Positions 919-62,589 of a stretch of DNA of 64,000 bases are shown piece by piece (position 1 is the first letter of the stretch; each line of letters starts with the position of its first letter). Made by a program: the position numbers and the translations under genes. The DNA is taken from positions 166,037 through 230,036 of the IMG/VR virus record IMGVR_UViG_3300001460_000004; one strand, given 5' to 3'. The notes below the pieces were generated by a model. It did not search any database, had not been told where the DNA came from, and worked only from the letters and a program-made list of their open reading frames with translations.

Positions 919-1701
919 ATGTCAAAAAAAGTATTAGTAACTGGCTGTAGTATGACCCGAGGGCATGGATTACGCAATGAACAAGACGATAAATGTCTAT
1001 GGGTCAATGCATTGTTACCTAACTGTATAATTAACAATTATGCAGTTGATGGTGCAAACAACTATAGTATTTTTATGCAAACTCTTGCACACTTACGACA
1101 AAACTATTATGATGTAGTATTAGTTGGCTGGAGTGCAATACCTCGTTGGTGTTTTAATGTTGGACTTGAATTGTATCAAACACACACTGTACTTAGAGAT
1201 GACGGACACAGTATAAACACAAACGACGGTGGACATTTTACTAGCAAATGGTTAGGCGAAACTGGTGACCGACTACGTAAAATACAAAACGATCACTGGG
1301 ATCTATTAGACTTAGTTGCATTTGTGAATGTAATACGTGACATTCAAGTTACAATGAGAGGTGGTAAACTTGTATTTGTTAACACCCTTGGGCCATGGCC
1401 CAGTGAATACTTTGAAAGAAAAAACATTTCATTACCAGACGAACTAGACGAATTTGAAAAAGTCATGTATAATATAAACAATAGAGATGATGAAGAAATA
1501 TTAACCTTGTACAATAAAGTTCACGACGACTACAAATACAATGGCGGAATTCGTAGTGAATTGTGGTTGAACTTGTACAACAGTTTAGCATCTCTACAAC
1601 AAGACACGGTAAGTGCAGAAGATTTACATCCTGGGTATGCTAGCCAAGCACATTATACTGATGCTTTTAAAAATAAAATTGATCGGATGATTGCAGAATG
1701 A
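919..1701 (+). CDS. SGNH/GDSL-like hydrolase or acyltransferase
   Basis: VTGCSMT block I, NYAVDGANN block II, C-terminal DLHP. Confidence 0.6.
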   Translation: MSKKVLVTGCSMTRGHGLRNEQDDKCLWVNALLPNCIINNYAVDGANNYSIFMQTLAHLRQNYYDVVLVGWSAIPRWCFNVGLELYQTHTVLRDDGHSINTNDGGHFTSKWLGETGDRLRKIQNDHWDLLDLVAFVNVIRDIQVTMRGGKLVFVNTLGPWPSEYFERKNISLPDELDEFEKVMYNINNRDDEEILTLYNKVHDDYKYNGGIRSELWLNLYNSLASLQQDTVSAEDLHPGYASQAHYTDAFKNKIDRMIAE

Positions 1702-3164
1702 AACAAGCAACTCTCATAGTACGAGACGAAGTTAATATTAAATTTGAAGGCTTAGATTTAGATACTCGCAAAAAACTGCATGCTAAATTTAAATTTCCTG
1801 TACCTTATGCAAGATATTTACCAGCAGTTAAACTTGGACGATGGGATGGCAAGATTGCATTTTTTCAAATGGGAGGTAGTAGCTATGTAAACTTATTGCC
1901 ACAAATACTTCCGATGGTAGTTGACGAAGGATATGACATAGAATTAAGTGACCTGCGTGAATATACAACCACATTTGATTTTGACAAAGTAACGAGTAAT
2001 TCATTTGCACATATCAAATGGCCAGAAAAACATCCAGCTGCTGGCGAAAGTATAACATTACGTGATTATCAAGTTGAAATAGTTAATAAGTTTTTAGAAA
2101 ACCCACAATGTTTACAGGAAATTGCAACCGGCGCAGGTAAAACTATTATGACTGCGGCACTGAGTCAACGCATTGAATCATATGGACGTAGTATTGTTAT
2201 TGTTCCCAATAAAAGTTTAGTAACACAAACTGAAAAAGATTACATCAACATGGGATTGGATGTGGGTGTATTTTTTGGTGACAGAAAAGAATTTGGTAAA
2301 ACACATACAATTTGTACTTGGCAAAGTTTGAATATACTGTTAAAGAATACAAAAAGTTTTGAAGCCGAAGTTACAATACAAGATTTTTTAGAAGATGTTG
2401 TTTGTGTTATAGTTGATGAAGTACATATGGCTAAAGCAGACGCACTAAAAACACTATTAACTGGTGTAATGAGTCAAATACCTATACGTTGGGGATTAAC
2501 AGGAACAATACCCAAGGAAGCATTTGAATTTGAAGCATTACATGTAAGTATAGGCCCAGTTGAAAGTCAACTGAGTGCTAGTGAATTACAAGAGAGAGGT
2601 GTATTGGCAAATTGCCATGTGAATATTGTACAATTAATTGACCAGGTAGAATATAATAATTATCAAAGTGAATTAAAATACTTATTGGAAGAAACAGGTA
2701 GACTGGATACTATAAGCGAACTTGTTAGTCGAGTTAACTTAACTGGAAATACATTAGTATTAGTTGATAGAATTAGTGCAGGCACAGCATTACAACAAAG
2801 ATTGCCTGACAGTGTTTTTATTAGTGGTGGTACTAAATCAGGTGAAAGGCAAGATGAGTATGATGAAGTGGCTACTGCCCAAGGTAAAATTATTATTGCC
2901 ACTTATGGGGTGGCTGCTGTGGGGATTAATATTCCCCGTATCTTTAATTTGGTTTTGTTGGAACCTGGAAAAAGTTTTGTTCGAGTTATCCAAAGTATCG
3001 GGCGTGGGATAAGAAAAGCAGAGGACAAAGATCATGTGCAAATATGGGATATCACTAGTACATGTAAATACGCCAAACGACATTTAACAAAAAGAAAAAC
3101 ATTTTACAAAGAGGCAAATTATCCCTTTAGTATTGAAAAATTAGATTGGATGAAAATTAAATGA
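1698..3164 (+). CDS. uvsW: UvsW-like SF2 DNA helicase
   Basis: LRDYQ, ATGAGKT Walker A, DEVH, TGT, QSIGRGIR motif VI; 488 aa. Confidence 0.9.
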   Translation: MKQATLIVRDEVNIKFEGLDLDTRKKLHAKFKFPVPYARYLPAVKLGRWDGKIAFFQMGGSSYVNLLPQILPMVVDEGYDIELSDLREYTTTFDFDKVTSNSFAHIKWPEKHPAAGESITLRDYQVEIVNKFLENPQCLQEIATGAGKTIMTAALSQRIESYGRSIVIVPNKSLVTQTEKDYINMGLDVGVFFGDRKEFGKTHTICTWQSLNILLKNTKSFEAEVTIQDFLEDVVCVIVDEVHMAKADALKTLLTGVMSQIPIRWGLTGTIPKEAFEFEALHVSIGPVESQLSASELQERGVLANCHVNIVQLIDQVEYNNYQSELKYLLEETGRLDTISELVSRVNLTGNTLVLVDRISAGTALQQRLPDSVFISGGTKSGERQDEYDEVATAQGKIIIATYGVAAVGINIPRIFNLVLLEPGKSFVRVIQSIGRGIRKAEDKDHVQIWDITSTCKYAKRHLTKRKTFYKEANYPFSIEKLDWMKIK

Positions 3165-3177
3165 TAAGAGACTTAAA

Positions 3178-3681
3178 ATGAAAATACTACAACTTGATAC
3201 AAATAGATCATACAACTTAGAAACACTGCCAGATGAAATTGGTGATTTACGTTTTGCAATATTTGACAATAGTGATCCTACTAATCCAGATTATTTCTTT
3301 ATACCTTTAATTTACTTAGAGTCTTTTAGTAGCCCTGCATTGGTGTTACGCATTGGAGAACATACAGTAAAAATGCCAATGGATTGGCAACTTTTAATTG
3401 GTGAACATGATACTGGAGATCTTGAAGTATTGCCATTGACCAGTTTAAACGATCGAGGATTTAGTGCATTTAAATTTAATCCATTAACTGATTTTCGACC
3501 CGAGTTTTACCCTGTAGAAGTAATTGATGTCTATCAAGATGTTACATGGTATGCGCCTAAACTTAAAAACGGACAATTACTTTGTGTGCCACTTAGTGAC
3601 GACCCAAAGCCAGAATGTGTATACTTTGTTAAGGATGTAAACCGCAACAGTGAAATTGTTGATTATAACAAGGCTTGGTAA
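3178..3681 (+). CDS. Conserved phage hypothetical protein
   Basis: 167-aa ORF directly after the helicase, normal codon pattern. Confidence 0.7.
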   Translation: MKILQLDTNRSYNLETLPDEIGDLRFAIFDNSDPTNPDYFFIPLIYLESFSSPALVLRIGEHTVKMPMDWQLLIGEHDTGDLEVLPLTSLNDRGFSAFKFNPLTDFRPEFYPVEVIDVYQDVTWYAPKLKNGQLLCVPLSDDPKPECVYFVKDVNRNSEIVDYNKAW

Positions 3682-4005
3682 ATGGGAAAATATTTAATTG
3701 TCTTTGTGACACTGTTTGTTGGTGCTTGCAGTAATTTACCTCAACCGCCTATAAGTTTTAATAAAAAAACAGTTATTATACCAAGAATCACTCCAGTTAA
3801 ATTAAGAGAGGTTGACTGGATGACAATAAGCATGTATAATATAGATGAAACAATTACAACCCTGCAATCTAAAGGACAGCCTGCTACAGTGTTTGGTCTC
3901 AGCGGTCAAGACTATGAGGACATAAGCGTAAACTTTGAAGCAATGCGGGACTATATAAAAGCACAACAACGTATTATTGATGCATATGAGGAATATCTCA
4001 AGTGA
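3682..4005 (+). CDS. Lipoprotein (candidate outer-membrane spanin)
   Basis: Signal peptide with lipobox LFVGAC, Pro-rich linker, C-terminal amphipathic helix. Confidence 0.55.
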   Translation: MGKYLIVFVTLFVGACSNLPQPPISFNKKTVIIPRITPVKLREVDWMTISMYNIDETITTLQSKGQPATVFGLSGQDYEDISVNFEAMRDYIKAQQRIIDAYEEYLK

Positions 4006-4457
4006 GTGAAAAACTAAACATAGCAAATGAAATGCGATGTGTGGATCAAAAAGATCGAGCCTTCTATGACAGTTTGACTGACGAAGAAAGAAAAAAGTTT
4101 TCAAACTTTCTTATGATACGGTGGAGTAGTTGTGTTAGCGGTGGTCGAGAAATGCAAGAGTACTATGTACAAAGTTGCAATCATTTTTTAAACAAACATT
4201 TTTTTACTATTAACAAACATCCTAAACTACAATGGTTATGTGCTACAGCTATTAGTCCAGGAATGGGAACGCATCGACACAATTGGATAAGCCCTAAAAA
4301 GAAAAATAAAGGAACTGATGCAAAGGTTCGCAAAATACTTTTACAAGAATTTCCTAATACAAAGTCTGATGACTTAGATGTACTATTAAAAATAAACAAT
4401 TTAAAAGATGTACGAGCGTTTTTAAAAGAACGAGGGCATGATTCTAAAAGTCAGTAA
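4002..4457 (+). CDS. Probable clamp-loader small subunit (gp62-like)
   Basis: Size, replication-gene context and FSxFLMxRW...HxWIxPKK pattern; recognition from memory only. Confidence 0.5.
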   Translation: MSEKLNIANEMRCVDQKDRAFYDSLTDEERKKFSNFLMIRWSSCVSGGREMQEYYVQSCNHFLNKHFFTINKHPKLQWLCATAISPGMGTHRHNWISPKKKNKGTDAKVRKILLQEFPNTKSDDLDVLLKINNLKDVRAFLKERGHDSKSQ

Positions 4458-5184
4458 TATTGTATTCAAACCCTTTATTACGTATGCGTTCTAATACAGT
4501 ATCAAATACAGTACCATCATCCCCAATAGATATTAGTATTACATTAGGAGATTGGTAAGTTAATCCGGTTAAACGCCCGTCCTTTAAGGCACAATTTATT
4601 AATTGATGATCATGTGGACCAAACCAAAATTGATTTTGTATTTCTTCTTCAGAATTGGCTATTATCTCTAACCGTTTTCCACTAGTTGCATGTGGTAAAA
4701 GTGATCGGCAGTGCAAGTGTATCCGACTTTCAGTTCCATAATTTTGTGCAGTATGTGTTAAGCCAGTGTCCATTAAACTCCAAACACCGTTAACAGGCAT
4801 ATGGTGTATAGTTTGATTATCAAAGTCCATCATAACAGCTAGTGGATTTGTAGTAATAGCTAAGTGATACCGATCATCTTGATCACTGTGGGCACCGTAA
4901 TACCTACGTGGATCTAGTTTTCTTAAATAGGCACCACCAACTGGTCCTAATAAATTTAATGCATCTCCAACAGGAGTATTTTCAAATTCTGGTAACAACA
5001 CATATGGATCGTTTACATTTAAATTGGCTCCTGGTTTGACAACTGCATCGCTACCATCTGGGGCAGTGTTTACTTTGTATGCCCATCCATTGTCTTTACC
5101 ATTTGCCCATGGCATATTTAACACTTGCTCTATGAGCAAAGCTGTGTTAATATTAGCTAAGTGTGTTAGAGGTGTGAGTAGCAT
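4444..5184 (-). CDS. Asp/Asn beta-hydroxylase-like 2OG-Fe(II) oxygenase
   Basis: HSD...H facial triad (GAHSDQD...THTAQN) and R-I-H-L; start moved to ATG 5184, which has TAAGTA 5 nt upstream. Confidence 0.65.
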   Translation of the reverse strand: MLLTPLTHLANINTALLIEQVLNMPWANGKDNGWAYKVNTAPDGSDAVVKPGANLNVNDPYVLLPEFENTPVGDALNLLGPVGGAYLRKLDPRRYYGAHSDQDDRYHLAITTNPLAVMMDFDNQTIHHMPVNGVWSLMDTGLTHTAQNYGTESRIHLHCRSLLPHATSGKRLEIIANSEEEIQNQFWFGPHDHQLINCALKDGRLTGLTYQSPNVILISIGDDGTVFDTVLERIRNKGFEYNITDF

Positions 5185-5189
5185 GTTAG

Positions 5190-5195
5190 TACTTA
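5190..5195 (-). promoter_or_regulatory. Late-promoter variant TAAGTA, 5 nt before ATG 5184
   Basis: Same geometry as the six exact TAAATA-N5-ATG cases. Confidence 0.5.
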
Positions 5196-5202
5196 TTAAG
5201 AA

Positions 5203-5877
5203 ATGAAATACAAGTGTAAATATTGCAAAAAAGAATTTCAAAGGGAGAATACTCTTGCAGTGCATGTGTGCGAAAAGAAACGTAGATATTTAAATCGTAA
5301 CGAACCTGGGGTATTAATTGGCTACAAGGCATATCTACGTTTCTATGAAATAACACAGGGCAGTAAAAAAACAAAAACATATGAAGAATTTAGTAACACT
5401 GCATATTACAGAGCATTTGTAAAGTTTGGTTATTCTTGCAGAGACATTAGATGTGTTAACATTGTACAGTTTACAGAATGGCTAATCAAACATAATAAAA
5501 AATTAGACAATTGGTGCAGTGACCGATTGTATACTGAATTTCTTGAGGTGTACTTAACAGTAGAAAGTGTAAACGATGCACTCACTCGAGCAATTGAAGA
5601 AAGCATACGCTGGAATGAAAAAACTGGTAATCCAACACATGATTATTTGCGTTATGGAAATATAAATGAATTGTGTTATGCAGTTACAACAGGTAGAATA
5701 AGTGGATGGGTGTTGTATAACTGTAATAGCGGCCAGGAGTTGTTGACTAAGTTAAATAAAGAACAAATTGAAATGCTTTGGCCATGGATTACTAGTGATA
5801 TTTGGGCTAAAAAGTTTAAAGAGTATCCAGAAGATATGAAATATGCAAAACACATACTTAAAACAGCAGGTTGGTAA
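5203..5877 (+). CDS. Conserved phage protein with an N-terminal C2H2/C2HC-like zinc finger
   Basis: YKCKYCKKEF...LAVHVC. Confidence 0.7.
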   Translation: MKYKCKYCKKEFQRENTLAVHVCEKKRRYLNRNEPGVLIGYKAYLRFYEITQGSKKTKTYEEFSNTAYYRAFVKFGYSCRDIRCVNIVQFTEWLIKHNKKLDNWCSDRLYTEFLEVYLTVESVNDALTRAIEESIRWNEKTGNPTHDYLRYGNINELCYAVTTGRISGWVLYNCNSGQELLTKLNKEQIEMLWPWITSDIWAKKFKEYPEDMKYAKHILKTAGW

Positions 5878-6863
5878 TGATACTAATTGATTTTCCAGGT
5901 GGTGCACACGGCAACTATGTTGAATACATTTGCAATAGATTTCTAGCCGGAGTAAAAACCAATCCTAGTCCTTTTAAAAGCAGTGGTGTGAGTCATGCCA
6001 AAGAATACTATAGTCCAATTAAATTTGAGGCTAAACATTATTTTCAATTTGAACCCAAAAGTGTGCTAGGTAGTACCCTAATTTCAATACAAGTAAAACA
6101 GCAACATTTGATGCAATTAATAGCGATCAATTTTTTACGTGCAGGCGAAGGAAATATTGATGTAAGAAAATTAGAAGATACACTGTATGATAGGTTAAAA
6201 GTTACCAACACTGGAATGATTGATAGCATACGCAAGAATTATATCAACCAAAGTATACTTGGATACAAAGATATCAAGGATCCTAAGTGGCCCAATTGTG
6301 ATAGTATAGAAGAATATCATCAATTACCACAGTACATTAAAAAAGAATTAACTGAACTACACAACTTTGAATTTTGGGAGTTTGATGAAAACAACCCTTA
6401 TTGTCCACGATGGATAATGAGAGATTATTTTTATCAAGGATTTATGGCCGAAGAAAACAGCGGTTTTTGGCAGTTTTGTTTAACACAAGAACGTGTGCGT
6501 CAAACAGCCCAACAAAGTTTGAGCATTGATTTTATGGATTTGTATAATATAGATAGTTTCACAAATATTGTACAGCAAATTGCTAACTTTACTGGGTATA
6601 CATTTGAAGAGACACAAGAGTTTAGAAACATACATCAAACATTTTTAAATAACCAACCTTTTAAAAACAGCTACAATTTTTGTAGTATGTTAATTACCGA
6701 TATTATTAATAACCAAATTGATAAATTACCAGAACTTGATGTCTTGCAAGAAGGTTATATCTGTGCTAAACTATGTAAACATTATGACACCACTGTAGAT
6801 TTAAGCGATGCCAGAGACTGGTTTAAAACATCAATATTACTTAAAGGATTTGTAAATGATTAA
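5871..6863 (+). CDS. Hypothetical protein (possible sulfotransferase/P-loop-like fold) with an inserted DPxWPxC module
   Basis: 330-aa ORF; 34-aa segment shared with the protein at 11938. Confidence 0.6.
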   Translation: MVMILIDFPGGAHGNYVEYICNRFLAGVKTNPSPFKSSGVSHAKEYYSPIKFEAKHYFQFEPKSVLGSTLISIQVKQQHLMQLIAINFLRAGEGNIDVRKLEDTLYDRLKVTNTGMIDSIRKNYINQSILGYKDIKDPKWPNCDSIEEYHQLPQYIKKELTELHNFEFWEFDENNPYCPRWIMRDYFYQGFMAEENSGFWQFCLTQERVRQTAQQSLSIDFMDLYNIDSFTNIVQQIANFTGYTFEETQEFRNIHQTFLNNQPFKNSYNFCSMLITDIINNQIDKLPELDVLQEGYICAKLCKHYDTTVDLSDARDWFKTSILLKGFVND

Positions 6864-8087: not shown

Positions 8088-8867
8088 ATGTATGCAGCTA
8101 CAGTATATTTATACCAACAAATTCAGAAGGTCTTACTTGTGGACAACTCTGATGGAAGTTACTTTGACCGGAGGTGGAGTGAAGTGTATTCAAAAAAATT
8201 AAAATTAAATTTAGGAGTCGATAATGTTATTTTGTTTGCATTTGAAAATCAAGATCAAAAACCAGTAAACATTTCAGGCAGTACATTCACATTTCGTCTC
8301 ATAAGCCAAAATGGTGAACAGTTACTATTAGCCAAAGAGTTAGTTAGTCTCAATAATGCCAAAGGACGTGCTAAAGTTACCATTACCAGTGCTGACATAA
8401 ACACATTATTTGAGCAACCTGCTAGTTGGAGTATTGAGCAAGCAAGTGGTAATCTTGAAACCGCAGTATTAGTAGATGCATACAGTGGTGCTCGCGGAGA
8501 CATTGAAGTTAATAACAGTGTGTATCCTGCATTTGTGCCCAGCAAAACATTAACTATTCCTGCACAAGCGCCAGACAGTACAATTTATTATACTAGCACA
8601 GTAACAACAGAAGGTGTAGACCAAACAACATTTGTAGTAACTCCTAATGGATTCACAGGAGAGATAAGAGTTAATGGTGCAGTTGATACTAGCGGTGATT
8701 GGTATGATATTACTTTTGTAGACTTTTCAACACAAGCAACTGTTGACGAAGTGCAACTTGTCAATAGCAGTGATTTAATTGGACTCAACGTCCCAGGATA
8801 TCATCCCTATTTGCGTTTAGAATTTGTTATAAGTGCAGGAAGCATTAGCAACATACTTTATCGATAA
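8088..8867 (+). CDS. Putative virion/baseplate protein (BppU-N-like)
   Basis: Beta-rich composition, GVDNVILF...DQKPVNISG pattern, late promoter and SD. Confidence 0.5.
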   Translation: MYAATVYLYQQIQKVLLVDNSDGSYFDRRWSEVYSKKLKLNLGVDNVILFAFENQDQKPVNISGSTFTFRLISQNGEQLLLAKELVSLNNAKGRAKVTITSADINTLFEQPASWSIEQASGNLETAVLVDAYSGARGDIEVNNSVYPAFVPSKTLTIPAQAPDSTIYYTSTVTTEGVDQTTFVVTPNGFTGEIRVNGAVDTSGDWYDITFVDFSTQATVDEVQLVNSSDLIGLNVPGYHPYLRLEFVISAGSISNILYR

Positions 8868-9571
8868 TGAAAAAAATTGTAAGTTTTGGAGATAGCTATG
8901 TTTGGGGCGATGAATTAATTGATCCTAAATTAGCAACACAACCTGATGCACATCCAGTGTTGATTGAAAATACCAAATACAGAGAACAAAACTGTTATAC
9001 GGGTTTGTTGGCCAACAGCTATGGTATTCCATACGAAAACTTTGGAATACCAGGTGGAAGTTTACAAAGCACAGTTTGGACATATCTTTGGTGGCTTGAT
9101 AATGAAAAACTACCCATTGAAGATTGTTTAGTTCTAGTTGGACTTACTGAACCTGGTAGGCACAGTTTTTATAATCCAAAGCATCGTGTGTATCCAAATG
9201 ATACAGATTGGAATCGTTTTGTACACAGTAGCTGGATACATAGTAACAATAGCAGTGACAATGAACAGTGGCATGAACTTGTTAAGTTACACACAGTATT
9301 GACAGATTGTCAAGCGTTAAGAGATCTAACACTACATACCACTCAATTGTTTTTTGAAAACACACAACATTCACATCCTGTGGTACAATTTTTTACATTG
9401 AATCACACAGCTACTAAACCATACTCCACATTGTGGAATTCTACACAAAGCCTACGTGACTTAACCCTGTCACCAAAATTACAAAAACCAAATGGTCATC
9501 CCAACGAAATTGGACATAAAATTATAAAAGAAGTCTTGCAAGAATACATATACCGTGCTATACTAAGTTAA
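8867..9571 (+). CDS. SGNH/GDSL-like protein
   Basis: FGDSY, NFGIPGGS, PNGHPN. Confidence 0.65.
   Translation: MKKIVSFGDSYVWGDELIDPKLATQPDAHPVLIENTKYREQNCYTGLLANSYGIPYENFGIPGGSLQSTVWTYLWWLDNEKLPIEDCLVLVGLTEPGRHSFYNPKHRVYPNDTDWNRFVHSSWIHSNNSSDNEQWHELVKLHTVLTDCQALRDLTLHTTQLFFENTQHSHPVVQFFTLNHTATKPYSTLWNSTQSLRDLTLSPKLQKPNGHPNEIGHKIIKEVLQEYIYRAILS
9536..9564 (+). promoter_or_regulatory. sigma70 promoter with extended -10; primase ATG 6 nt downstream (leaderless)
   Basis: TTGCAA-N17-TATACT with TGn; ATG at 9571; no SD. Confidence 0.7.
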
Positions 9572-10552: not shown

Positions 10553-11941
10553 ATGCTTAAAGAATACAATCTCGATGTACAGAAATTGTTTTTAGAAATG
10601 ATGTTAGAAGATGCACAAAGTTATGTGCGTATTCAAAACATATTCAATCCAGAAAACTTTGATCGAAGCTTGATCGAAGTAGCTAAGTTCATTAAAGATC
10701 ATTGTGATGATTACAAAACAATGCCAGAGATAGCTCAGATAAACTCCAGCACTGGCGTGACACTAAGTCCAGTACCTGATCTCAACAGTGGACACTTTGA
10801 ATGGTTTATGACCGAGTTTGAAAACTTTACTAAAAGACAAGAACTTGAACGAGCAATACTAAAAGCTGCAGACTTATTAGAAAAAGGTACGTATGAGCCA
10901 GTTGAAAAACTTATCAAAGATGCAGTACAAATAAGTTTGACACGTGATTTAGGAATAAATTATTTTGATGATCCACGTGCCAGGCTAACTGCTTTAAAAA
11001 ACAACAATGGTCAAAACAGCACAGGCTGGAAAGCACTTGATAAAATGTTGTATGGTGGGTTTAACAGAGGCGAACTACAAATATTTGCAGGCGGATCGGG
11101 CTCGGGCAAGAGTTTGGTTATGCAAAATTTAGCAGTTAACTGGATACAAGCAGGACTCAATGGTGTGTACATTACACTAGAATTAAGTGAAGGCTTAACT
11201 GCAATGCGTGTTGATAGCATGTTAACGGGCACCAGTAGCAAAGACATTTTTCGAGAGTTAGATAATGTTGAAATGAAAATTAAAATGGCTGGCAAAGCAA
11301 GTGGGCAACTACAAGTCAAGTACATGCCAGCACAAAGCAATGTAAATGACATTAGGGCGTATTTAAAAGAATTAGAAATACAAAGTGGTTACAAAACAGA
11401 CTTTTTGTTAGTTGACTATCTAGACTTATTGATGCCGGTTAGTGCAAAAGTTAGCCCAAATGATCAATTTATTAAAGACAAGTATGTAAGCGAAGAACTA
11501 CGCAATTTAGCAAAAGAGTTAAATGTATTGTTTGTAACAGCATCGCAATTAAATCGTAGTGCAGTTGAAGAAATTGAATTCGACCACAGTCATATTGCTG
11601 GTGGTATTAGTAAAATTAATACAGCAGATAATGTGTTTGGTATATTTACTAGCAGGGCAATGCGTGAACGTGGGCGATATCAGATACAAGCAATGAAAAC
11701 ACGTAGTAGTAGTGGAGTTGGACAAAAAATTGATTTAGATTTTGATATAGCTAGTTTAAGAATTATGGATTGCGATGAAGATGCACAGCAAAGCAGTAGC
11801 GGGCATGGTAACATATACGAAAGCATTAAAGCAACAACAAATGTTAACGACACAAGTAGTCCAGTTACCGAAACTCGAAAAGTTGAAGCAGATGTGCAAA
11901 GTAGTAAACTTAAAGGCTTGCTAGCATCAATGAAATCATGA
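10553..11941 (+). CDS. gp41: Replicative DNA helicase (gp41/DnaB-like)
   Basis: GGSGSGKS Walker A, YITLEL, VDYLDL, TASQLNR. Confidence 0.92.
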   Translation: MLKEYNLDVQKLFLEMMLEDAQSYVRIQNIFNPENFDRSLIEVAKFIKDHCDDYKTMPEIAQINSSTGVTLSPVPDLNSGHFEWFMTEFENFTKRQELERAILKAADLLEKGTYEPVEKLIKDAVQISLTRDLGINYFDDPRARLTALKNNNGQNSTGWKALDKMLYGGFNRGELQIFAGGSGSGKSLVMQNLAVNWIQAGLNGVYITLELSEGLTAMRVDSMLTGTSSKDIFRELDNVEMKIKMAGKASGQLQVKYMPAQSNVNDIRAYLKELEIQSGYKTDFLLVDYLDLLMPVSAKVSPNDQFIKDKYVSEELRNLAKELNVLFVTASQLNRSAVEEIEFDHSHIAGGISKINTADNVFGIFTSRAMRERGRYQIQAMKTRSSSGVGQKIDLDFDIASLRIMDCDEDAQQSSSGHGNIYESIKATTNVNDTSSPVTETRKVEADVQSSKLKGLLASMKS

Positions 11942-12795
11942 TATTACCTAAGTTAGTTATTCCCAGTAGAATTAATCAACATTGGATAGAGAGTGGAATG
12001 GACTCGTACGATCTCTGTGTTGACAAAAAACATTTTAAAAAATACCCACACACTGTAAAATATTATTACAACAGCCGTGGTTTTCGTGACCGTGAATGGC
12101 CTAACTCAGTAGATGATTGCATATGGTGTGTTGGTGATAGTTTTACAGTAGGGTTAGGGGTACCACATGAACACAGCTGGAGTTATATACTAGGGGAACG
12201 TTTGAATAAACGCACAATAAATGTTAGCATGGATGGTGCTAGCAACACATGGATACGCAGGCAAGCTGTACAAATACTAGAACTACAACCCAAGTTACTA
12301 ATACTACAATGGAGTTACATCACTAGACGAGAAGCAACTATGGATCAATTGTGGCAAAAGTTCTACGATAGTGTGAGAGATCCAAGTTGGCCAGAATGTA
12401 AAACCTATGCACAAATTTCAGAGTTACCCGAGTGGATAAGAACTGAACTTGAAACAGTGCATAACTGTAGCAATGTTATGGAAAACATCGACGATACTAA
12501 TAAGCGTCTACGTTATACTCATACCAGCGACGAACAAGACAAAGAACATTTATACGATCAAATTACACAAGTTGAAAGTGCAGTAGATTCAACTTTATTA
12601 ATACATAGTTTTGTGCCTCATTTTAGTCCAAATGGATATGCTGTTCCCATTCCTAAAAGTATACAACCAAGACATATACCTGAAATAACTAAATTAGATC
12701 TTGCTCGGGACGGTCATCACTATGATCGGTTAACTGCTGAACATTTTGTTGATCAGTTGGAGAATTTAATAACTGAGAACAGTGCCATTTCCTAA
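11938..12795 (+). CDS. SGNH-like protein with an inserted DPxWPxC module
   Basis: VGDSF, NVSMDGASN, DGHHY. Confidence 0.65.
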   Translation: MILPKLVIPSRINQHWIESGMDSYDLCVDKKHFKKYPHTVKYYYNSRGFRDREWPNSVDDCIWCVGDSFTVGLGVPHEHSWSYILGERLNKRTINVSMDGASNTWIRRQAVQILELQPKLLILQWSYITRREATMDQLWQKFYDSVRDPSWPECKTYAQISELPEWIRTELETVHNCSNVMENIDDTNKRLRYTHTSDEQDKEHLYDQITQVESAVDSTLLIHSFVPHFSPNGYAVPIPKSIQPRHIPEITKLDLARDGHHYDRLTAEHFVDQLENLITENSAIS

Positions 12796-35158: not shown

Positions 35159-35159
35159 A

Positions 35160-52002: not shown

Positions 52003-53145
52003 ATGTTTTTTAGCATTAGCAGAGTACATGATCAACGTTTTCCATACCACACACCTTTAGGAGATACTCGTTGGATATGTTCACATGATGAAGGCTGGCA
52101 AGTTTATAACTCTCCCTCTGCACCGCTGCGGAAAGGCTATGTTGTTGGCAATCACAAAAATGCTAATAGTTTAACAATTACTATACATAAAGATAAAGTT
52201 ATACTACAACATGAAAACATGCGTAGTTTTCCACTGTGGTGGTATCCTAAACGTGCAGTATTAACCAATTTAAGTATACTTGATGAATTTAATGTTGAAA
52301 CAATATTTGTTGATCAACAAGTAACCTTGCAAGGACTTAGTTTAAAATTACACAAAATAGATCCACTTGGTGATATAACTCATATTAAACCTAACAGCAA
52401 AACCATTACCCAGGTTGTTAATGAAACAAAGTCAATACTAACAGAAACATGCATTGATTTCTTTACACAATACAAAAACGTTAATTTATTTGTTACTGGT
52501 GGCATTGACACAATGTTATTGCAAAGTATAATTGATTCTTCAGGGTTGCATTGTAACACAATTGATCGTGAACATTTTGAGTATGACTTGTTTACTAACA
52601 AAAACATAGAACAGCTACAAGAACTTCACTGGGCATACAAGCAAATACATCATTGGCGTGGTCCAAACATATTAATGACTGGGGGGTGCGGAGATGAGTT
52701 TATGATGCGTGGCCCAAACATGGTTGGGTTGTATTGTGCATGGCATAACATTGACATACTTGATATTTTACGATTAACTAAAAACCAGTATCATAGTGTT
52801 TATTATCTTAAAGATAAAAATGTTCGTGTGTTTGATGATCTTTGGAAAAATCGATGGGAATGGCAAGATCGACTCCCTACATATAAAGACTTAGTTGAGT
52901 ATATTCTCAATTATAATGCTAACGATCACCAGCATTGGCACCTTGGTAATACCCTTACATTTACGCCGTTTAAAAATATTGATCTTACTAAATTATTGTT
53001 GCAACTGAGTCCAGAGCAGCTAACAACACAATTTACTGATGCAAATGTAAACAAACAAATAATATATAACTTATCACCTAATAGACTTAAAGAAGTAAGC
53101 GAGTTTAAAAATATTATGACCCGGGGCAATCTTGTGGTTAAATAA
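52003..53145 (+). CDS. Asparagine-synthetase-like (PP-loop) ATP-dependent ligase
   Basis: LFVTGGIDT (cf. SGGxDS) and LMTGGCGDE (cf. GxGADE); no N-terminal catalytic Cys. Confidence 0.55.
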   Translation: MFFSISRVHDQRFPYHTPLGDTRWICSHDEGWQVYNSPSAPLRKGYVVGNHKNANSLTITIHKDKVILQHENMRSFPLWWYPKRAVLTNLSILDEFNVETIFVDQQVTLQGLSLKLHKIDPLGDITHIKPNSKTITQVVNETKSILTETCIDFFTQYKNVNLFVTGGIDTMLLQSIIDSSGLHCNTIDREHFEYDLFTNKNIEQLQELHWAYKQIHHWRGPNILMTGGCGDEFMMRGPNMVGLYCAWHNIDILDILRLTKNQYHSVYYLKDKNVRVFDDLWKNRWEWQDRLPTYKDLVEYILNYNANDHQHWHLGNTLTFTPFKNIDLTKLLLQLSPEQLTTQFTDANVNKQIIYNLSPNRLKEVSEFKNIMTRGNLVVK

Positions 53146-53224: not shown

Positions 53225-53238
53225 AACAGAGGAAAATA

Positions 53239-53943
53239 ATGAAACGTATTGGCTTTTATGGACACAGTGCTGCATGTTGGGCAAACTTCCCTATATATGA
53301 CCAAACTAGCTTTATTGATATGACTATTGAAAAAACTGGCTATAAACTGGTCAATAAAGGTGTTCCGCAAGGTTCACAAGAACGTATACTATTTGAATTA
53401 AAAAAAACTAAAAAGCTAGACTTTGCAATAATATTTCATAGTATCCCAAAGTTTGTTTTCTTGCCCACAGCAGATCGTGATGTAGACATAAATGATATTG
53501 ATCAACGAAAATGTACATACATGTGGAAAGAAAAACAAGAACGCAACGAACTTGAATCAATGCGAGATGATTATTTTAACTACGGTGGAATAAAGGAAGC
53601 ATTTGGAGATATCAAAAACTTTATTACTACGTTTGCAAGTTACAGGGAATATTTGCATCATCCAGATTTACAAATGAATAGATTTTTTGGTGCATTAGTG
53701 CAAATCGATCAGTACGTAACACATATGAAAATACCCACTATACACATTTACGGCACAAAGCATATACCAAATTGGTTTGAATTTAATAAAACAAGTTTGC
53801 AACGACCAGACATACACGAGCTATGTGAGCAACACTACCAAGGGGGTTATCCAAATAACATAAGTGCCGAAGGACAACATATTATTGCTGAAGAGTTGAT
53901 TAATCAACTTTACATACTTGACGAAGATCATCATTTAGATTAG
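53239..53943 (+). CDS. SGNH-like hypothetical protein
   Basis: FYGHSA, NKGVPQGS; SD GAGG. Confidence 0.5.
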   Translation: MKRIGFYGHSAACWANFPIYDQTSFIDMTIEKTGYKLVNKGVPQGSQERILFELKKTKKLDFAIIFHSIPKFVFLPTADRDVDINDIDQRKCTYMWKEKQERNELESMRDDYFNYGGIKEAFGDIKNFITTFASYREYLHHPDLQMNRFFGALVQIDQYVTHMKIPTIHIYGTKHIPNWFEFNKTSLQRPDIHELCEQHYQGGYPNNISAEGQHIIAEELINQLYILDEDHHLD

Positions 53944-57251: not shown

Positions 57252-57449
57252 ATGAACAATCAACAAAATATAGCACAAACACTTCAAGCCGCCAGTGACA
57301 TGTGTAAACAAGCTAAAAACAAAGAAGAATTAGAGCGAGTCTTAAGAGTAACCAATGATCTTATTACTTGGACTGCTAGTCAATTGACCAAAGAAGATAC
57401 AACTATTGATATTAAATCAATTTGGAGAAAAGTTAACGAAAAAGTGTAA
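57252..57449 (+). CDS. Small helical hypothetical protein
   Basis: SD AAGGTG; start moved to ATG 57252. Confidence 0.6.
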   Translation: MNNQQNIAQTLQAASDMCKQAKNKEELERVLRVTNDLITWTASQLTKEDTTIDIKSIWRKVNEKV

Positions 57450-57459
57450 AGGAAAGCAA

Positions 57460-58560
57460 GTGGCATTTAAAATATCCCCTATTAAAGAATTTGGAACATT
57501 TGGTGTATATGTAGATAATGTAGATATGGACCATATGACTGATGATGATTGGTTAGAACTAGGTCAATTAGCAGTGGAAAAATTAGTAATTGTTTTTAGA
57601 AATATTAACATGAGCAAAGGACAATATGCCGATTGGATACCAAAATGGGGACCACTTAAAGCTGATCTTAGAGCTAGATTTAGAAGAAAATACGGACAAG
57701 ACTTTGACGCACTTAAACCTGAAACATGGGAAGGCATTGATGGGGTTGACCGAACATGGTTAGAAACTAGAGGAAATGCACTAGAAGCAGTTGATGATGG
57801 AAGCGGTCGTCACTTAACACGTATATACGGAGGCAAAGACGGACAAGGTAAAATGATGGGTGCCTTTGCATATGGAGAATTGTACTGGCATAGTAACGAA
57901 AGCAGTAGTTTAACTTTTAGCCCAATGGTGAGTTTGTTAGGTTGGGAAGAAATGCATAATAGTTGCACAGGATTTGTACAAACAATTGATTACTACGAAT
58001 CACTAAGTGATAGTTTTCGTCGTGAACTTAATGACATGATTGTAGTACATGGGTATAAAGCAGGCTTTGTAAACGATAACGAACACACTGATGAAGTTTT
58101 TAGTGCCCATGTTAAGATGAGTTTTTGTCCAGATGAAGGTACTGAAACACCATTAGTGTGCGTTGCACCAAATGGTCGTAAAGGGTTGCATTACACAGTT
58201 AATAGTGCAGTAAAGATAAAAGGTATGAGCGACAACGAAAGTAAAAAATTGTTTACACGTTTAGATCACGAATTGTTTACAAGTGAAAATATATTTGATC
58301 ATCATTATGCTGTAGGTTCAAAAGATCTGCTGGTATTTGATAACAGTGTAACATTACATCGTCGAGTAGGTGGAGAACCAGGGCGTAAAGCATTTAGAAT
58401 GCAGTTTGATATATCACCATTGATAGATAAACCCTGGAGACCGTTTTTAGCACATCCTGAATACGATAAAGAATACGTTGAAAAAACACATGATCTTGTT
58501 AATTTAGTAGGAGGCGATTTAGGTGAACGCTTTAAATTGCCTTCAAGGGGTGTGAACTAA
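57460..58560 (+). CDS. TauD/TfdA-family 2OG-Fe(II) dioxygenase
   Basis: LYWHSNE, FDNSVTLHRR; GTG start with SD AAGGA. Confidence 0.8.
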   Translation: MAFKISPIKEFGTFGVYVDNVDMDHMTDDDWLELGQLAVEKLVIVFRNINMSKGQYADWIPKWGPLKADLRARFRRKYGQDFDALKPETWEGIDGVDRTWLETRGNALEAVDDGSGRHLTRIYGGKDGQGKMMGAFAYGELYWHSNESSSLTFSPMVSLLGWEEMHNSCTGFVQTIDYYESLSDSFRRELNDMIVVHGYKAGFVNDNEHTDEVFSAHVKMSFCPDEGTETPLVCVAPNGRKGLHYTVNSAVKIKGMSDNESKKLFTRLDHELFTSENIFDHHYAVGSKDLLVFDNSVTLHRRVGGEPGRKAFRMQFDISPLIDKPWRPFLAHPEYDKEYVEKTHDLVNLVGGDLGERFKLPSRGVN

Positions 58561-60854: not shown

Positions 60855-60856
60855 GT

Positions 60857-61597: not shown

Positions 61598-61632
61598 AAT
61601 TTTCTTGCTCTCCAACGAAGTTTGTGTTACTA

Positions 61633-61645
61633 TATTTAGTAAATA
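61633..61645. promoter_or_regulatory. Back-to-back late boxes TATTTA-G-TAAATA; a further TAAATA at 61668-61673 lies 4 nt before ATG 61678
   Basis: Lies between divergent genes. Confidence 0.55.
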
Positions 61646-61677
61646 ATACCTTAGATTAGGAGGCGCTTAAATACTAC

Positions 61678-62589
61678 ATGCTCACTGGCTTACACATCGA
61701 ACCCACAAACTTATGTACTCTCAAATGCGAAGGTTGTGCAAGAACTATATTTAGAAAACAATGGCTTAAACATTGGAAAAATTATAGTATTGATATTGTC
61801 AAACTACTACAATTTTTAGATATAAATCTCGATAACATGTTGATATATCTCTGTGGTAATTATGGAGATCCAATATATCATCCTAAATTTTATGAGCTTG
61901 TTACAGAACTTAAGGCACGTGGTGCCCAGTTAAAAATAACAACAAATGGTAGTTACAAGACAACAGCTTGGTGGAAAAAATTAGTTGCACAGCTAGATAA
62001 AAATGATACTATTGAATTTAGTATCGATGGTACACCTGAAACATTTACAAACTACAGAGAAAATGGTGACTGGAAAAGCATAAAACTAGGAATAGACGTA
62101 GCAACAGCGGCTAGTGTTCGCACAATTTGGAAGTATATTCCTTTTGCATTTAATGCCAATGACATTGATAATGTTGCCCAACTGAGTATAAAAATGGGGT
62201 TTGATGGATTTTTGTTAGACCGCAGTGATAGGTATGAGGGAGAACTTAGAGATTTGGCGCCAGACGATGAAAACTTAATACACCCAAGGGCCAAAGGAAG
62301 AGTTAAAGCCTTAGATGGAACAGCTGACATTGATGCAAAATGCGACAAAGGCAATATGCATTACATAAGTGCCGATGGTTACTATTCACCTTGTTGCTTT
62401 ATAGCTGATCATCGTTACTATTACAAAACACCTTTTGGAAAAAACAAAAACAATTACGGCATTGCCAATACAACAATAAGTAATATTTTAAAGCAGAATG
62501 ACACAGTTTCTTTCTACAAAAACATACACTTAACCAAACCATTATGTTGCACAATGAATTGTCCAAGGTTGAAAGGCACCAATGATTAA
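61678..62589 (+). CDS. Radical SAM protein with C-terminal SPASM/twitch domain
   Basis: CTLKCEGC, GNYGDP, TNG, SIDG, YISADGYYSPCC. Confidence 0.88.
   Translation: MLTGLHIEPTNLCTLKCEGCARTIFRKQWLKHWKNYSIDIVKLLQFLDINLDNMLIYLCGNYGDPIYHPKFYELVTELKARGAQLKITTNGSYKTTAWWKKLVAQLDKNDTIEFSIDGTPETFTNYRENGDWKSIKLGIDVATAASVRTIWKYIPFAFNANDIDNVAQLSIKMGFDGFLLDRSDRYEGELRDLAPDDENLIHPRAKGRVKALDGTADIDAKCDKGNMHYISADGYYSPCCFIADHRYYYKTPFGKNKNNYGIANTTISNILKQNDTVSFYKNIHLTKPLCCTMNCPRLKGTND

What the first reader, a model, noticed from the sequence alone, without database searches (positions are those of the whole stretch)
919..62589. Dispersed tailoring toolkit: SGNH, sulfotransferase, glycosyltransferase, radical SAM and oxygenase genes scattered among core genes
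Seen: 4 SGNH-like, 3 or more sulfotransferase-like, 4 GT10-like, 3 radical SAM, 3 2OG-Fe oxygenase, UDP-glucose dehydrogenase, amidinotransferase, AsnB-like ligase and cupin genes, about 20 in 64 kb, inserted singly and on either strand between core genes. Known: these families build and decorate glycans (acetylation, sulfation, oxidation) or modify nucleobases. Inference: the phage makes a complex sulfated/acylated glycoconjugate (virion coat, host-surface remodelling or DNA hypermodification) with a non-operonic pathway. The substrate cannot be told from sequence.
Basis: partly seen in the sequence, partly recalled or inferred. Interest (0 to 1): 0.65.

Follow-up and report, generated by a model that had tools for sequence, protein, structure and literature searches.

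The report
Sugar-tailoring gene modules in marine jumbo phage
The window is the right end of an uncultured marine T4-like jumbo phage that really does carry about twenty sugar-modifying enzyme genes, but they sit in small conserved modules (one six-gene cassette is shared by dozens of related viral contigs) rather than singly, and what they decorate is still unknown.

Summary
The observation largely holds. HMM, profile, fold and paralogy tests support 19 tailoring genes, 28% of the window:
- four GT-B glycosyltransferase-like paralogs
- four SGNH-like genes, one of them weakly supported
- two sulfotransferase-like genes
- three radical SAM genes, two of them N-terminal-twitch type
- three Fe/2OG-type oxygenases
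- a nucleotide-sugar 6-dehydrogenase
- a StrB1-like amidinotransferase
- an AsnB-like gene

A third sulfotransferase and a separate cupin were not found. "GT10" membership is not established.

"Inserted singly, non-operonic" is only partly right. Adjacent toolkit pairs number 9 against 4.3 expected (P=0.006). Genes 37987-46706 form a cassette: GT-B | dehydrogenase, hydroxylase, amidinotransferase, coiled-coil/beta protein | GT-B. The same cassette recurs in 37-39 of 80 viral loci and in all four fully compared ~350 kb relatives.

Outside the window the genome has a dense 22 kb sugar cluster. In total it holds 7 GT-B, 14 radical SAM and 3 amidinotransferase genes.

The gateway enzymes of the known DNA-hypermodification routes, and lipid-carrier initiating transferases and flippases, are absent from complete relatives.

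The best reading is cytoplasmic assembly of a heavily tailored glycan, probably on a phage protein. This is a new variant of the glycan gene sets already noted in large T4-like marine phages.

The parts
5..901 (+). N-terminal-twitch radical SAM gene. It is cut by the window start; the full ORF is G000:165792-166937, 381 aa.
   Evidence: NF033640 227.9 bits against a cut-off of 170. CNLKCITC motif. Paralogs elsewhere in the genome.
919..1701 (+). SGNH-like gene (GCS...DLHPG) lying 18 bp after the radical SAM gene. Accessory: absent from four relatives.
   Evidence: Member of family A4, whose profile hits only GDSL/SGNH chains in PDB. The same rSAM>SGNH pair occurs in L050 and L053. No ortholog in G001, G002, G004 or G005.
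4444..5265 (-). Asp/Arg beta-hydroxylase-type (PF05118) oxygenase. A solitary accessory insertion.
   Evidence: Pfam 25.7 bits against a cut-off of 22.6. HSD motif. Absent from relatives.
5871..6863 (+). Accessory gene of unknown fold that shares a 34-aa motif with the SGNH-like gene at 11938.
   Evidence: blastp motif match. No Pfam, PHROG, NCBIfam or PDB match, and hhalign is negative.
8867..9571 (+). SGNH-like gene (GDS...NGHPNE) between a core gene and the primase. Syntenic in G001 and G002.
   Evidence: Family A4. Orthologs of 47-53% identity at the same slot.
11938..12795 (+). SGNH-like gene, the first gene of a three-gene island after DnaB.
   Evidence: Weak Pfam and NCBIfam GDSL matches. 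Family A4. Travels with the sulfotransferase as a pair in G001 (50.1-52.2 kb) and G002 (65.6-67.7 kb).
12689..13900 (-). Sulfotransferase-like gene (N-terminal DRVGST loop), convergent with and overlapping the SGNH gene.
   Evidence: ESM-Atlas neighbours carry Stf0 / Sulfotransfer_3 (features 0.91-0.93; structure TM up to 0.52). No direct HMM hit.
13951..15213 (+). N-terminal-twitch radical SAM gene, third gene of the island.
   Evidence: NF033640 191.2 bits against 170. CNMSCVYC motif.
17415..18029 (+). Stf0-type sulfotransferase-like gene overlapping the stop codon of the core DUF6267 gene. Accessory.
   Evidence: PF09037 29.6 bits against 22. Absent from relatives.
36876..37658 (-). Metallophosphoesterase next to the cassette, conserved in G001 and G002.
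   Evidence: phrog_1649 E=3e-25. Synteny.
37987..39369 (-). GT-B glycosyltransferase-like paralog, the left flank of the conserved cassette.
   Evidence: Paralogy. Family HMM 82 bits. Syntenic in G001 and G002, with a GT-B at the same cassette position in 30+ loci.
39305..40579 (+). Nucleotide-sugar 6-dehydrogenase (UDP-Glc/GDP-Man dehydrogenase family), first gene of the overlapping operon.
   Evidence: PF00984 and PF03721. PDB UDP-glucose dehydrogenases at E about 1e-15. 56-73% identical in all four relatives.
40557..41078 (+). PF05118 (LpxO/KdoO/Asp-hydroxylase type) Fe/2OG oxygenase.
   Evidence: Pfam 22.7 bits against 22.6. HSD motif. Conserved in all relatives and in 36 loci.
41075..42001 (+). 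StrB1/AGAT-type amidinotransferase with a C-terminal GGGFHCVT motif.
   Evidence: Profile A3 against 1bwd E=1.5e-51; also AGAT, HsvA and SxtG. 56-58% identical in all relatives. 35% identical to the 'inosamine amidinotransferase' of cyanophage S-SCSM2R, which also sits after a 2OG oxygenase.
41988..43268 (+). Conserved ~425-aa protein with long N-terminal helices and a confident C-terminal beta domain. Possible fibre or appendage, and a candidate acceptor.
   Evidence: AlphaFold: C-terminal part pLDDT 77-95, whole model 63.5. Only weak BFVD/PDB resemblance to tail fibres. One copy per genome, present in 39 of 80 loci. No named homolog.
43247..43822 (+). Unknown 191-aa gene, last of the overlapping run. 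Present in G001 and G002 only.
   Evidence: No family match.
45720..46706 (-). GT-B glycosyltransferase-like gene, right flank of the cassette. This is the protein that was modelled.
   Evidence: 545 homologs, none with a Pfam domain. pLDDT 94.4. Foldseek top hit HpFucT 2nzw. VIA Z 12.6-11 for many GT-B enzymes.
50108..52002 (+). Two tandem GT-B paralogs (50108-51043 and 51040-52002) that overlap by 4 bp.
   Evidence: AET/SET...TEK motif.
52003..53145 (+). AsnB-like (PP-loop TGGIDT) amide ligase without an N-terminal Cys nucleophile. It abuts the GT-B pair.
   Evidence: Atlas structure TM 0.65-0.69 to Asn_synthase clusters. Motif. AsnB-like genes lie near GT-B in L008, L024 and L061.
53239..53943 (+). 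Weak SGNH-like gene (GHS) after tRNA-Pro.
   Evidence: hhalign against A4: E=2.3e-4, probability 45%, N-terminal 72 columns only. No other match.
57406..58560 (+). TauD/TfdA-family Fe/2OG dioxygenase. Accessory.
   Evidence: PF02668 68.4 bits. PDB hits. Absent from relatives.
61678..62589 (+). Short radical SAM gene, not of the N-terminal-twitch type. Accessory.
   Evidence: PF04055 36.5 bits. CTLKCEGC motif. One paralog at G000:87755-88783.

Best explanation
The window is the right-hand 64 kb of an uncultured marine T4-like jumbo phage. Its relatives are about 350 kb long.

The tailoring genes are a modular set of soluble, cytoplasmic sugar-modifying enzymes shared by the whole clade.

Shown:
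- A fixed core cassette. A nucleotide-sugar 6-dehydrogenase, a PF05118 oxygenase, a StrB1-type amidinotransferase and a conserved coiled-coil/beta-domain protein are read as one overlapping operon, bracketed by two GT-B glycosyltransferase-like genes.
- A second conserved cluster outside the window. It holds a sugar dehydratase/epimerase, an aminotransferase, GT-B genes, an amidinotransferase, a carbamoyltransferase, a kinase, five twitch radical SAM genes and an SGNH gene.
- Small swappable modules (rSAM+SGNH, SGNH+sulfotransferase, GT-B+SGNH, GT-B+GT-B+AsnB-like) that occupy fixed slots between core replication genes and differ between relatives.

Inferred:
- Nucleotide sugars from the host pool are oxidised to uronic acids, aminated and amidinated.
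- The GT-B enzymes transfer them onto an acceptor.
- The product is then acylated or de-acylated (SGNH), sulfated, amidated (AsnB-like), hydroxylated, and altered by radical chemistry.
- The acceptor is most likely a phage protein. The protein encoded inside the cassette is the first candidate.
- The fast turnover of the peripheral modules diversifies the glycan between related phages.
For: Family assignments.

Clustering: adjacent toolkit pairs 9 against 4.3 expected, P=0.006.

Conservation:
- The cassette is present in G001, G002, G004 and G005 at 41-73% identity.
- It appears in the same order in 37-39 of 80 viral loci.
- GT-B/SGNH convergent pairs occur in about 20 further loci.

Sugar supply: SDR epimerase/dehydratase and DegT aminotransferase genes are in all 7 clade genomes. 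In G000 they sit directly upstream of the 30-50 kb cluster.

No lipid-carrier route: no phosphoglycosyl transferase (PF02397, PF00953) and no Wzx flippase in 7 genomes, 6 of them at least 92% complete. The enzymes have no membrane segments.

Context: fibre or spike genes lie in the same stretch, namely a pectate-lyase protein at 22692, a tail-fibre PHROG at 29273 and a virion-protein PHROG at 19795.

Slot swapping: after DnaB, G000 has SGNH+sulfotransferase+rSAM, G001 has a GT-B, and G002 has two rSAM genes.

Precedent: in cyanophage S-SCSM2R a homologous oxygenase+amidinotransferase pair sits in a GT/rSAM/aminotransferase cluster. One amidinotransferase and one prolyl hydroxylase were detected in its virion proteome (PMC12801897).
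Against: - No enzyme activity, donor or acceptor is known for any of these proteins.
- The GT-B family has no sequence match to any curated glycosyltransferase family, and its fold ties at Z about 12 with DNA, protein, small-molecule and glycan transferases alike.
- The 'fibre-like' label rests on a poor whole-chain model (pLDDT 63.5) and weak fold hits. Its uniform length across homologs is not typical of tail fibres.
- The 80 loci were chosen by similarity to one GT-B, so the recurring cassette reflects conservation within a broad lineage, not independent association.
- Several accessory genes (TauD, the short rSAM, the Stf0-like gene) could serve unrelated functions.
Confidence: 0.45

Rival explanations
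1. Host-envelope remodelling. The enzymes make or tailor sugar units that enter the host's own lipid-carrier pathways. This changes LPS, capsule or S-layer glycans during infection, for superinfection exclusion, grazer avoidance or receptor masking.
For: This is the interpretation given in the literature for the glycan gene sets of P-SSM2, S-SCSM1 and S-SCSM2R (PMC12801897). PF05118 includes, from my own knowledge, lipid A and Kdo hydroxylases. AsnB-like plus uronic-acid dehydrogenase is a known O-antigen combination, again from my own knowledge.
Against: No phage-encoded initiating transferase, flippase or membrane-bound enzyme in 7 genomes. The cassette encloses a phage-specific non-enzyme protein.
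Confidence: 0.22
2. DNA hypermodification. The GT-B enzymes and tailoring enzymes decorate phage DNA bases with modified sugars, as in T-even phages, to evade restriction.
For: The phage is T4-like (Gp23 capsid protein). T4 beta-glucosyltransferase ties with the best fold matches (Z 12.2). Fast turnover of modules fits an arms race. A YhhQ-type transporter and a phosphoribosyltransferase are in the window.
Against: No thymidylate-synthase-family hydroxymethylase in G000, the complete genome G001, or G002. No TGT/DpdA or QueC in any of five genomes. Sulfation, amidination and uronic acids are unknown in DNA modification, to my knowledge.
Confidence: 0.08
3. A diffusible or intracellular small molecule. 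The clusters would build an aminoglycoside-, aminocyclitol- or nucleoside-like metabolite that acts on the host, on competitors or on defence systems.
For: The amidinotransferase profile matches streptomycin StrB1 best (E=1.5e-51). The out-of-window cluster has a NodU/TobZ-type carbamoyltransferase, a P-loop kinase, a DegT aminotransferase and twitch-domain radical SAM genes. The S-SCSM2R authors called the homologs 'antibiotic synthesis genes'.
Against: I searched for no cyclitol synthase or exporter, and none was seen. A conserved non-enzyme protein sits inside the cassette. The number and turnover of GT-B and SGNH genes fit polymer or protein decoration better.
Confidence: 0.12
4. No common product. 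The genes are unrelated auxiliary or moron genes that accumulated in the plastic regions of a large T4-like genome.
For: Many are lineage-specific single insertions (919, 4444, 5871, 17415, and most of 46.8-64 kb) next to plainly unrelated accessory genes such as PEPCK, IMPDH-type and cytochrome-c-like genes.
Against: Adjacency exceeds chance. The same pairs and the same cassette recur across many contigs. The same few families are expanded in every relative.
Confidence: 0.13

Closest known systems
Glycan ('LPS' / cell-wall synthesis and modification) gene sets of large T4-like cyanophages: P-SSM2, S-SCSM1 and S-SCSM2R (PMC12801897)
   Same: T4-like marine myovirus. Many glycosyltransferases, sugar epimerases, 2OG oxygenases, a radical SAM gene, an aminotransferase, and an oxygenase+amidinotransferase pair (35% identity). 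Function unproven there too.
   Different: - This clade is larger (about 350 kb) and lacks psbA.
- It uses a virus-specific GT-B family without Pfam membership instead of GT2/GT11/GT25.
- It has 12-18 radical SAM and 4-12 SGNH genes per genome.
- It has a fixed cassette that includes a dehydrogenase and a conserved non-enzyme protein. Neither that protein nor the GT-B has a tblastn match in 50,697 phage records.
T4-like environmental viral genome TARA_ERS488813_N000010 with 12 radical SAM genes (PMC5332604)
   Same: Marine T4-like genome with a large radical SAM complement.
   Different: That genome is 183 kb and was discussed for Fe-S cluster supply. No link to sugar tailoring or to the cassette was made. 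I did not test whether it is related to this clade.
Virus-encoded virion glycosylation (Mimivirus fibrils, chlorovirus capsid glycans, mycobacteriophage capsid/tail O-glycans). Named from my own knowledge, not tested here.
   Same: Cytoplasmic, virus-encoded nucleotide-sugar and transferase genes acting on the virus's own structural proteins, without a lipid-carrier pathway.
   Different: No glycan has been observed for this phage. The enzyme families (twitch radical SAM, amidinotransferase, sulfotransferase) differ.
GT10 alpha-1,3-fucosyltransferase (H. pylori FucT, PDB 2nzw)
   Same: GT-B fold. Best Foldseek E-value (1.7e-5). A similar acidic ...TEK motif in the C-terminal domain.
   Different: No PF00852 match. 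About 8-10% identity. Z 12.4 ties with SenB, EXT1/2, T4 BGT and Gtf3.
StrB1 inosamine-phosphate amidinotransferase / AGAT family
   Same: Strong profile match, and the conserved C-terminal Cys motif.
   Different: The acceptor is unknown. The gene is encoded in a phage operon with a sugar dehydrogenase and an oxygenase rather than in an aminocyclitol cluster.

Membership tests
GT10 fucosyltransferase (Pfam PF00852) | Sequence match to the family HMM | tested here: not met
   No PF00852 hit for any of the four paralogs at E<=0.01. No hit in the six-frame search of the whole genome at E<=10. None of 120 listed homologs carries a Pfam domain.
GT10 fucosyltransferase (Pfam PF00852) | GT-B fold, closest to solved GT10 structures | tested here: inconclusive
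   The GT-B fold is clear (pLDDT 94.4). HpFucT is top by Foldseek E-value. By VIA, Z 12.4 ties with SenB 12.6, EXT 12.4, T4 BGT 12.2 and Gtf3 12.1.
GT10 fucosyltransferase (Pfam PF00852) | C-terminal donor-binding motif (ENS...YxTEK, recalled from memory) | tested here: inconclusive
   E214, T215, E226 and K227 are invariant or nearly so in 37 sequences. The AET...TEK pattern is found in 3 of 4 paralogs, and GET...TEK in the fourth. No residue-level structural alignment was made.
SGNH/GDSL hydrolase | Catalytic Ser in an N-terminal GxS block, an Asn block, and a C-terminal DxxH block | tested here: met
   In the 36-sequence family, G9, S11, N48 and H237 are at least 90% conserved. Consensus GCSFT ... 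GAxN ... DxxHP.
SGNH/GDSL hydrolase | Family HMM above the curated cut-off | tested here: not met
   PF13472 gives 22.7-23.3 bits against 32.9 for 11938-12795 only. However, the family profile hits only GDSL/SGNH chains in PDB (best E=5.6e-5, N- and C-terminal blocks).
Sulfotransferase (Stf0 PF09037 and relatives) | Family HMM match | tested here: inconclusive
   17415-18029 scores 29.6 bits against 22, but no single stretch passes. 12689-13900 has no HMM hit, only Atlas neighbours with Stf0 / Sulfotransfer_3.
Sulfotransferase (Stf0 PF09037 and relatives) | PAPS-binding N-terminal loop | tested here: inconclusive
   By eye, DRVGST and YRTGST at residues 12-18. No structural check. A possible APS-kinase-like gene lies next to the SGNH+sulfotransferase pair in G001 and G002, but none was detected in G000.
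Amidinotransferase (StrB1/AGAT; guanidino-group-modifying superfamily) | Sequence homology over the whole domain | tested here: met
   Profile of three paralogs against 1bwd E=1.5e-51, AGAT 4e-36, HsvA, SxtG. The window protein alone gives weak NCBIfam hits to dimethylargininase and arginine dihydrolase.
Amidinotransferase (StrB1/AGAT; guanidino-group-modifying superfamily) | Catalytic Cys near the C-terminus, with conserved His and Asp | tested here: met
   C296 in GGGFHCVT, H192 and D194 are invariant among the paralogs. Their roles are assigned from general knowledge of the family.
Radical SAM; NF033640 N-terminal twitch subfamily | CxxxCxxC cluster motif and a family HMM above cut-off | tested here: met
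   The motif is present in all three window genes. NF033640 gives 227.9 and 191.2 bits against 170 for 5-901 and 13951-15213. 61678-62589 scores only 40 bits there but passes Pfam PF04055.
UDP-glucose/GDP-mannose 6-dehydrogenase | N-terminal NAD and central domains above cut-off | tested here: met
   PF03721 46.1 bits against 27. PF00984 54.6 bits against 25.4. PDB UDP-glucose dehydrogenases at E about 1e-15. The C-terminal domain was not detected and the sugar specificity is unknown.
Asparagine synthetase B-like amide ligase | PP-loop synthetase domain | tested here: inconclusive
   No Pfam, NCBIfam or PDB sequence hit. Atlas structure TM 0.65-0.69 to Asn_synthase clusters. TGGIDT motif at residue 165.
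Asparagine synthetase B-like amide ligase | N-terminal Cys glutaminase nucleophile | tested here: not met
   The protein starts MFFSIS. If active, it would not use glutamine in the canonical way.
Fe(II)/2OG oxygenases | Family HMM plus an HxD/E metal motif | tested here: met
   PF05118 25.7 and 22.7 bits against 22.6. TauD 68.4 bits against 27. HSD, HSD and HTD motifs. The distal His was not mapped.

The most novel reading that the evidence does not exclude
A widespread lineage of marine T4-like jumbo phages encodes a self-contained pathway for an aminoglycoside-like or guanidino-sugar product. The enzymes involved would be a StrB1-type amidinotransferase, a TobZ/NodU-type carbamoyltransferase, twitch radical SAM enzymes, an aminotransferase, a kinase, and a virus-only GT-B family. 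The product would either be a free metabolite or an unprecedented guanidino-, carbamoyl- and sulfate-bearing glycan on a dedicated virion protein. In either case 12-18 uncharacterised radical SAM enzymes per genome would be doing sugar chemistry.
Probability: 0.12. Interest if true: 0.85.

Novelty: new variant of a known kind. Interest (0 to 1): 0.55.

Why it matters
Large T4-like marine phages are known to carry glycan-related genes, but nobody knows what those genes act on. This work gives a defined, testable unit: a six-to-seven-gene cassette conserved across dozens of viral contigs and built around a phage-specific protein.

It also identifies two large, uncharacterised, mostly viral enzyme families:
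- a GT-B family with more than 500 members and no Pfam model
- N-terminal-twitch radical SAM genes, 12-18 per genome

If the product is a virion glycan, phages would join giant viruses in making complex, self-encoded protein glycans. Module swapping would then be a route to antigenic or adhesive diversity. If it is a metabolite or a DNA modification, it would be new chemistry.

Tried and rejected
- Megablast of 25 kb against GenBank phages: no match.
- tblastn of the GT-B and of the cassette protein against phages: no match.
- PDB sequence and profile searches found nothing useful for the GT-B family, the AsnB-like gene (41), the 12689 sulfotransferase-like gene (42), the 40557 oxygenase (91) and 5871 (106).
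- PHROGs gave almost nothing for 20 unknown proteins.
- The look-up of encoding contigs only returned near-identical copies of the same phage.
- Complex prediction of GT-B 45720 with the cassette protein returned no answer (score 0.00). This is not evidence either way.
- 5871-6863 as an SGNH or sulfotransferase gene: rejected for lack of any support.
- Cyanophage host: psbA is absent in five genomes, so a cyanobacterial host is doubtful.
- Literature searches for a described clade or cassette found only the S-SCSM2R paper and the 12-rSAM T4-like genome.

Full report
**What the window is**

The 64 kb window is bases 166,037-230,036, the right end, of a 230,036-bp linear IMG/VR virus contig rated 66% complete. 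GC is about 0.35.
- The genome encodes a T4-type major capsid protein (PF07068, E=9e-99).
- Its DnaB-type helicase is 64-70% identical to those of nine other viral contigs. Six of these are 320-357 kb and 92-100% complete, and one has terminal repeats.
- Near-identical DNA occurs in marine and brine metagenomes from well over a dozen studies. No RNA run holds it.
- There is no megablast match in GenBank phages.
- No psbA is present in five clade genomes, so the host is unknown and probably not a cyanobacterium.
- From 1.7 to 46.7 kb the window is collinear with G001 289.7-345.4 kb and with G002. This stretch holds a helicase, primase, DnaB, a DUF6267 protein, ribonucleotide reductase, HSP20, UvdE and putative spike and fibre genes.

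**Checking the observation**

I scanned 63 ORFs against Pfam, 20 against PHROGs and 13 window ORFs against NCBIfam (10, 3).

Direct HMM support exists for:
- three radical SAM genes
- two PF05118 oxygenases and one TauD dioxygenase
- one Stf0-type sulfotransferase
- a nucleotide-sugar 6-dehydrogenase
- weakly, one SGNH gene

The remaining claims needed deeper tests.
- *'GT10-like' genes.* The four genes are true paralogs. They belong to a family of at least 545 metagenomic proteins, none with a Pfam domain. A 37-sequence alignment gave an AlphaFold model with pLDDT 94.4. Foldseek ranks H. pylori alpha-1,3-fucosyltransferase first. VIA-align gives Z 12.6-11 to many GT-B enzymes, including SenB, EXT1/2, T4 beta-glucosyltransferase and Gtf3. 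The fold is GT-B, but GT10 membership is not shown.
- *SGNH-like genes.* Iterative local profile searches join 919-1701, 8867-9571 and 11938-12795 into one family. A 36-sequence profile of it hits only GDSL/SGNH chains in PDB and keeps the Ser, Asn and His blocks. 53239-53943 is only weakly linked.
- *Amidinotransferase.* 41075-42001 and two paralogs elsewhere in the genome give a profile that matches StrB1 at E=1.5e-51.
- *ESM-Atlas neighbours.* They support 52003-53145 as Asn-synthase-like and 12689-13900 as sulfotransferase-like.
- *Not found.* A third sulfotransferase and a separate cupin. 5871-6863 remains of unknown fold.

In all, 19 genes, 28% of the window, are supported.

**Layout**

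The genes are not mainly solitary.
- Nine adjacent toolkit pairs are seen against 4.3 expected by shuffling (P=0.006).
- The modules are rSAM+SGNH (5-1701), SGNH+sulfotransferase+rSAM (11938-15213), the cassette at 37987-46706, and GT-B+GT-B+AsnB-like+tRNA-Pro+SGNH-like (50108-53943).
- In the cassette, genes 39305-43822 overlap one another at start and stop codons.
- Truly solitary accessory insertions are 4444(-), 5871, 17415, 57406 and 61678.
- Most of 46.8-64 kb has no counterpart in four relatives.

**Comparative evidence**

I fetched four complete relatives and 80 viral loci around GT-B homologs.
- The dehydrogenase, PF05118 oxygenase, amidinotransferase and the ~425-aa protein at 41988 are conserved in all four relatives (27-73% identity), with GT-B genes on both flanks.
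- The same order, GT-B> <protein <(~245-aa gene) <amidinotransferase <oxygenase <dehydrogenase GT-B>, occurs in 37-39 of the 80 loci. A twitch radical SAM gene often lies just downstream of the 41988-type gene.
- The ~245-aa gene is missing in G000, G001 and G002.
- About 20 further loci pair a GT-B with a convergent, overlapping SGNH gene. rSAM>SGNH pairs and AsnB-like genes next to GT-B also recur.
- The 80 loci were selected by similarity to one GT-B. This shows conservation across a broad lineage rather than independent association.
- The slot after DnaB carries SGNH+sulfotransferase+rSAM in G000, a GT-B in G001, and two rSAM genes in G002.
- Per genome the clade has 4-10 GT-B, 4-12 SGNH, 12-18 radical SAM and 1-6 amidinotransferase genes.

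**The rest of the genome**

- G000 28-50 kb is a dense cluster. In order it holds an SDR epimerase/dehydratase, a DegT aminotransferase, two GT-B genes, an amidinotransferase, a zeta-toxin-type P-loop kinase, a carbamoyltransferase, a PNP_UDP_1 nucleosidase-type gene, five radical SAM genes, a GT-B, a radical SAM gene, an amidinotransferase and an SGNH gene.
- The cluster is conserved in G001 at 149.7-168.7 kb.
- Eight of ten radical SAM proteins tested pass the NF033640 N-terminal-twitch cut-off.

**Discriminating the possible targets**

- *DNA.* The gateway enzymes for the two well-known DNA-hypermodification routes are missing. No thymidylate-synthase-family gene is found in G000, the complete genome G001, or G002. 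No TGT/DpdA or QueC is found in five genomes.
- *Host envelope.* No phosphoglycosyl transferase (PF02397, PF00953) and no Wzx flippase is present in seven genomes. The toolkit proteins lack membrane segments. The product is therefore assembled in the cytoplasm on something other than a phage-primed lipid carrier.
- *Phage protein.* The cassette protein has long N-terminal helices and a confidently predicted C-terminal beta domain. Its resemblance to tail fibres is only weak. All homologs are unnamed and of uniform length.
- A complex prediction with the neighbouring GT-B gave no answer.

**What is known**

- Cyanophage S-SCSM2R (244 kb) has a 35%-identical amidinotransferase directly after a 2OG oxygenase, inside a glycosyltransferase/rSAM/aminotransferase cluster.
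- Its authors list 22 'cell wall synthesis and modification' genes, including 13 glycosyltransferases, and three 'antibiotic synthesis' genes. They note homologs in S-SCSM1 and P-SSM2.
- They also detected an amidinotransferase and a prolyl hydroxylase in the virion proteome. They left the function open (PMC12801897).
- A 183-kb T4-like environmental genome with 12 radical SAM genes has been reported (PMC5332604).

**Verdict**

- The 'non-operonic' description is not right. The toolkit consists of a conserved cassette plus swappable modules, within a genome-wide expansion of a few enzyme families.
- I favour cytoplasmic synthesis of a heavily tailored glycan on a phage protein (confidence 0.45). 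The rivals are host-envelope remodelling (0.22), unrelated accessory genes (0.13), a small molecule (0.12) and DNA modification (0.08).
- It is a new variant of a known kind of phage gene set. The defined cassette and the two uncharacterised enzyme families are the parts worth following up.

Noticed in passing
window 53150-53224: tRNA-Pro (anticodon AGG) sits between the AsnB-like gene and the weak SGNH-like gene, inside an accessory module.
   Followed up: no
window 63278-64000: ATP-dependent PEP carboxykinase gene fragment (PF01293, E=7e-49), cut by the contig end. This is an unusual auxiliary gene for a phage, and no counterpart was found in four relatives.
   Followed up: partly
window 33980-35957: An IMPDH/GMP-reductase-family gene followed by a weak class-I aldolase-like gene. 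Both are accessory and absent from four relatives.
   Followed up: partly
window 59232-63097: YhhQ/Vut_1 queuosine-precursor-type transporter, class-3 lipase (minus strand), a short radical SAM gene and a phosphoribosyltransferase lie together in the variable end. No TGT or QueC is present in the genome.
   Followed up: partly
window 5871-6863 and 11938-12795: A 34-residue motif (DPxWPxC...LPxxIxxEL..HN, 38% identity) is shared by a protein of unknown fold and an SGNH-like protein. Its meaning is unknown.
   Followed up: partly
window 55552-56841: A 429-aa protein with a weak N-terminal cytochrome-c-type match (PF13442, E=1e-3). Accessory.
   Followed up: no
window 56807-57181: A 124-aa gene that is 73-79% identical in all four relatives but lies at a different position there (next to the 21640-type gene). 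This implies a local rearrangement in this genome.
   Followed up: no
L081 8317-8883 (G000:38317-38883, minus strand): A PNP_UDP_1 phosphorylase-superfamily gene directly upstream of five radical SAM genes. It could remove 5'-deoxyadenosine, the inhibitory by-product of radical SAM enzymes. That role is my inference.
   Followed up: no
L081 10125-14348 and L003 12284-13576: In these radical SAM proteins the SPASM/twitch Cys-rich domain lies N-terminal to the radical SAM core, the reverse of the usual order. This matches NCBIfam NF033640.
   Followed up: partly
G001:48670-48936 and G002:64870-65133: A partial APS-kinase-like P-loop gene lies just upstream of the SGNH+sulfotransferase pair in two relatives, which hints at local PAPS supply. 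It was not detected in G000.
   Followed up: partly
L003 14824-15567 and about 38 other loci: A conserved ~245-aa gene of unknown family lies between the amidinotransferase and the 41988-type gene in most cassettes (also in G004 and G005). It is absent from G000, G001 and G002.
   Followed up: partly
window 48682-50046 (minus strand): A 454-aa orphan ORF with no homolog in the relatives or the fetched loci, and no family match.
   Followed up: no
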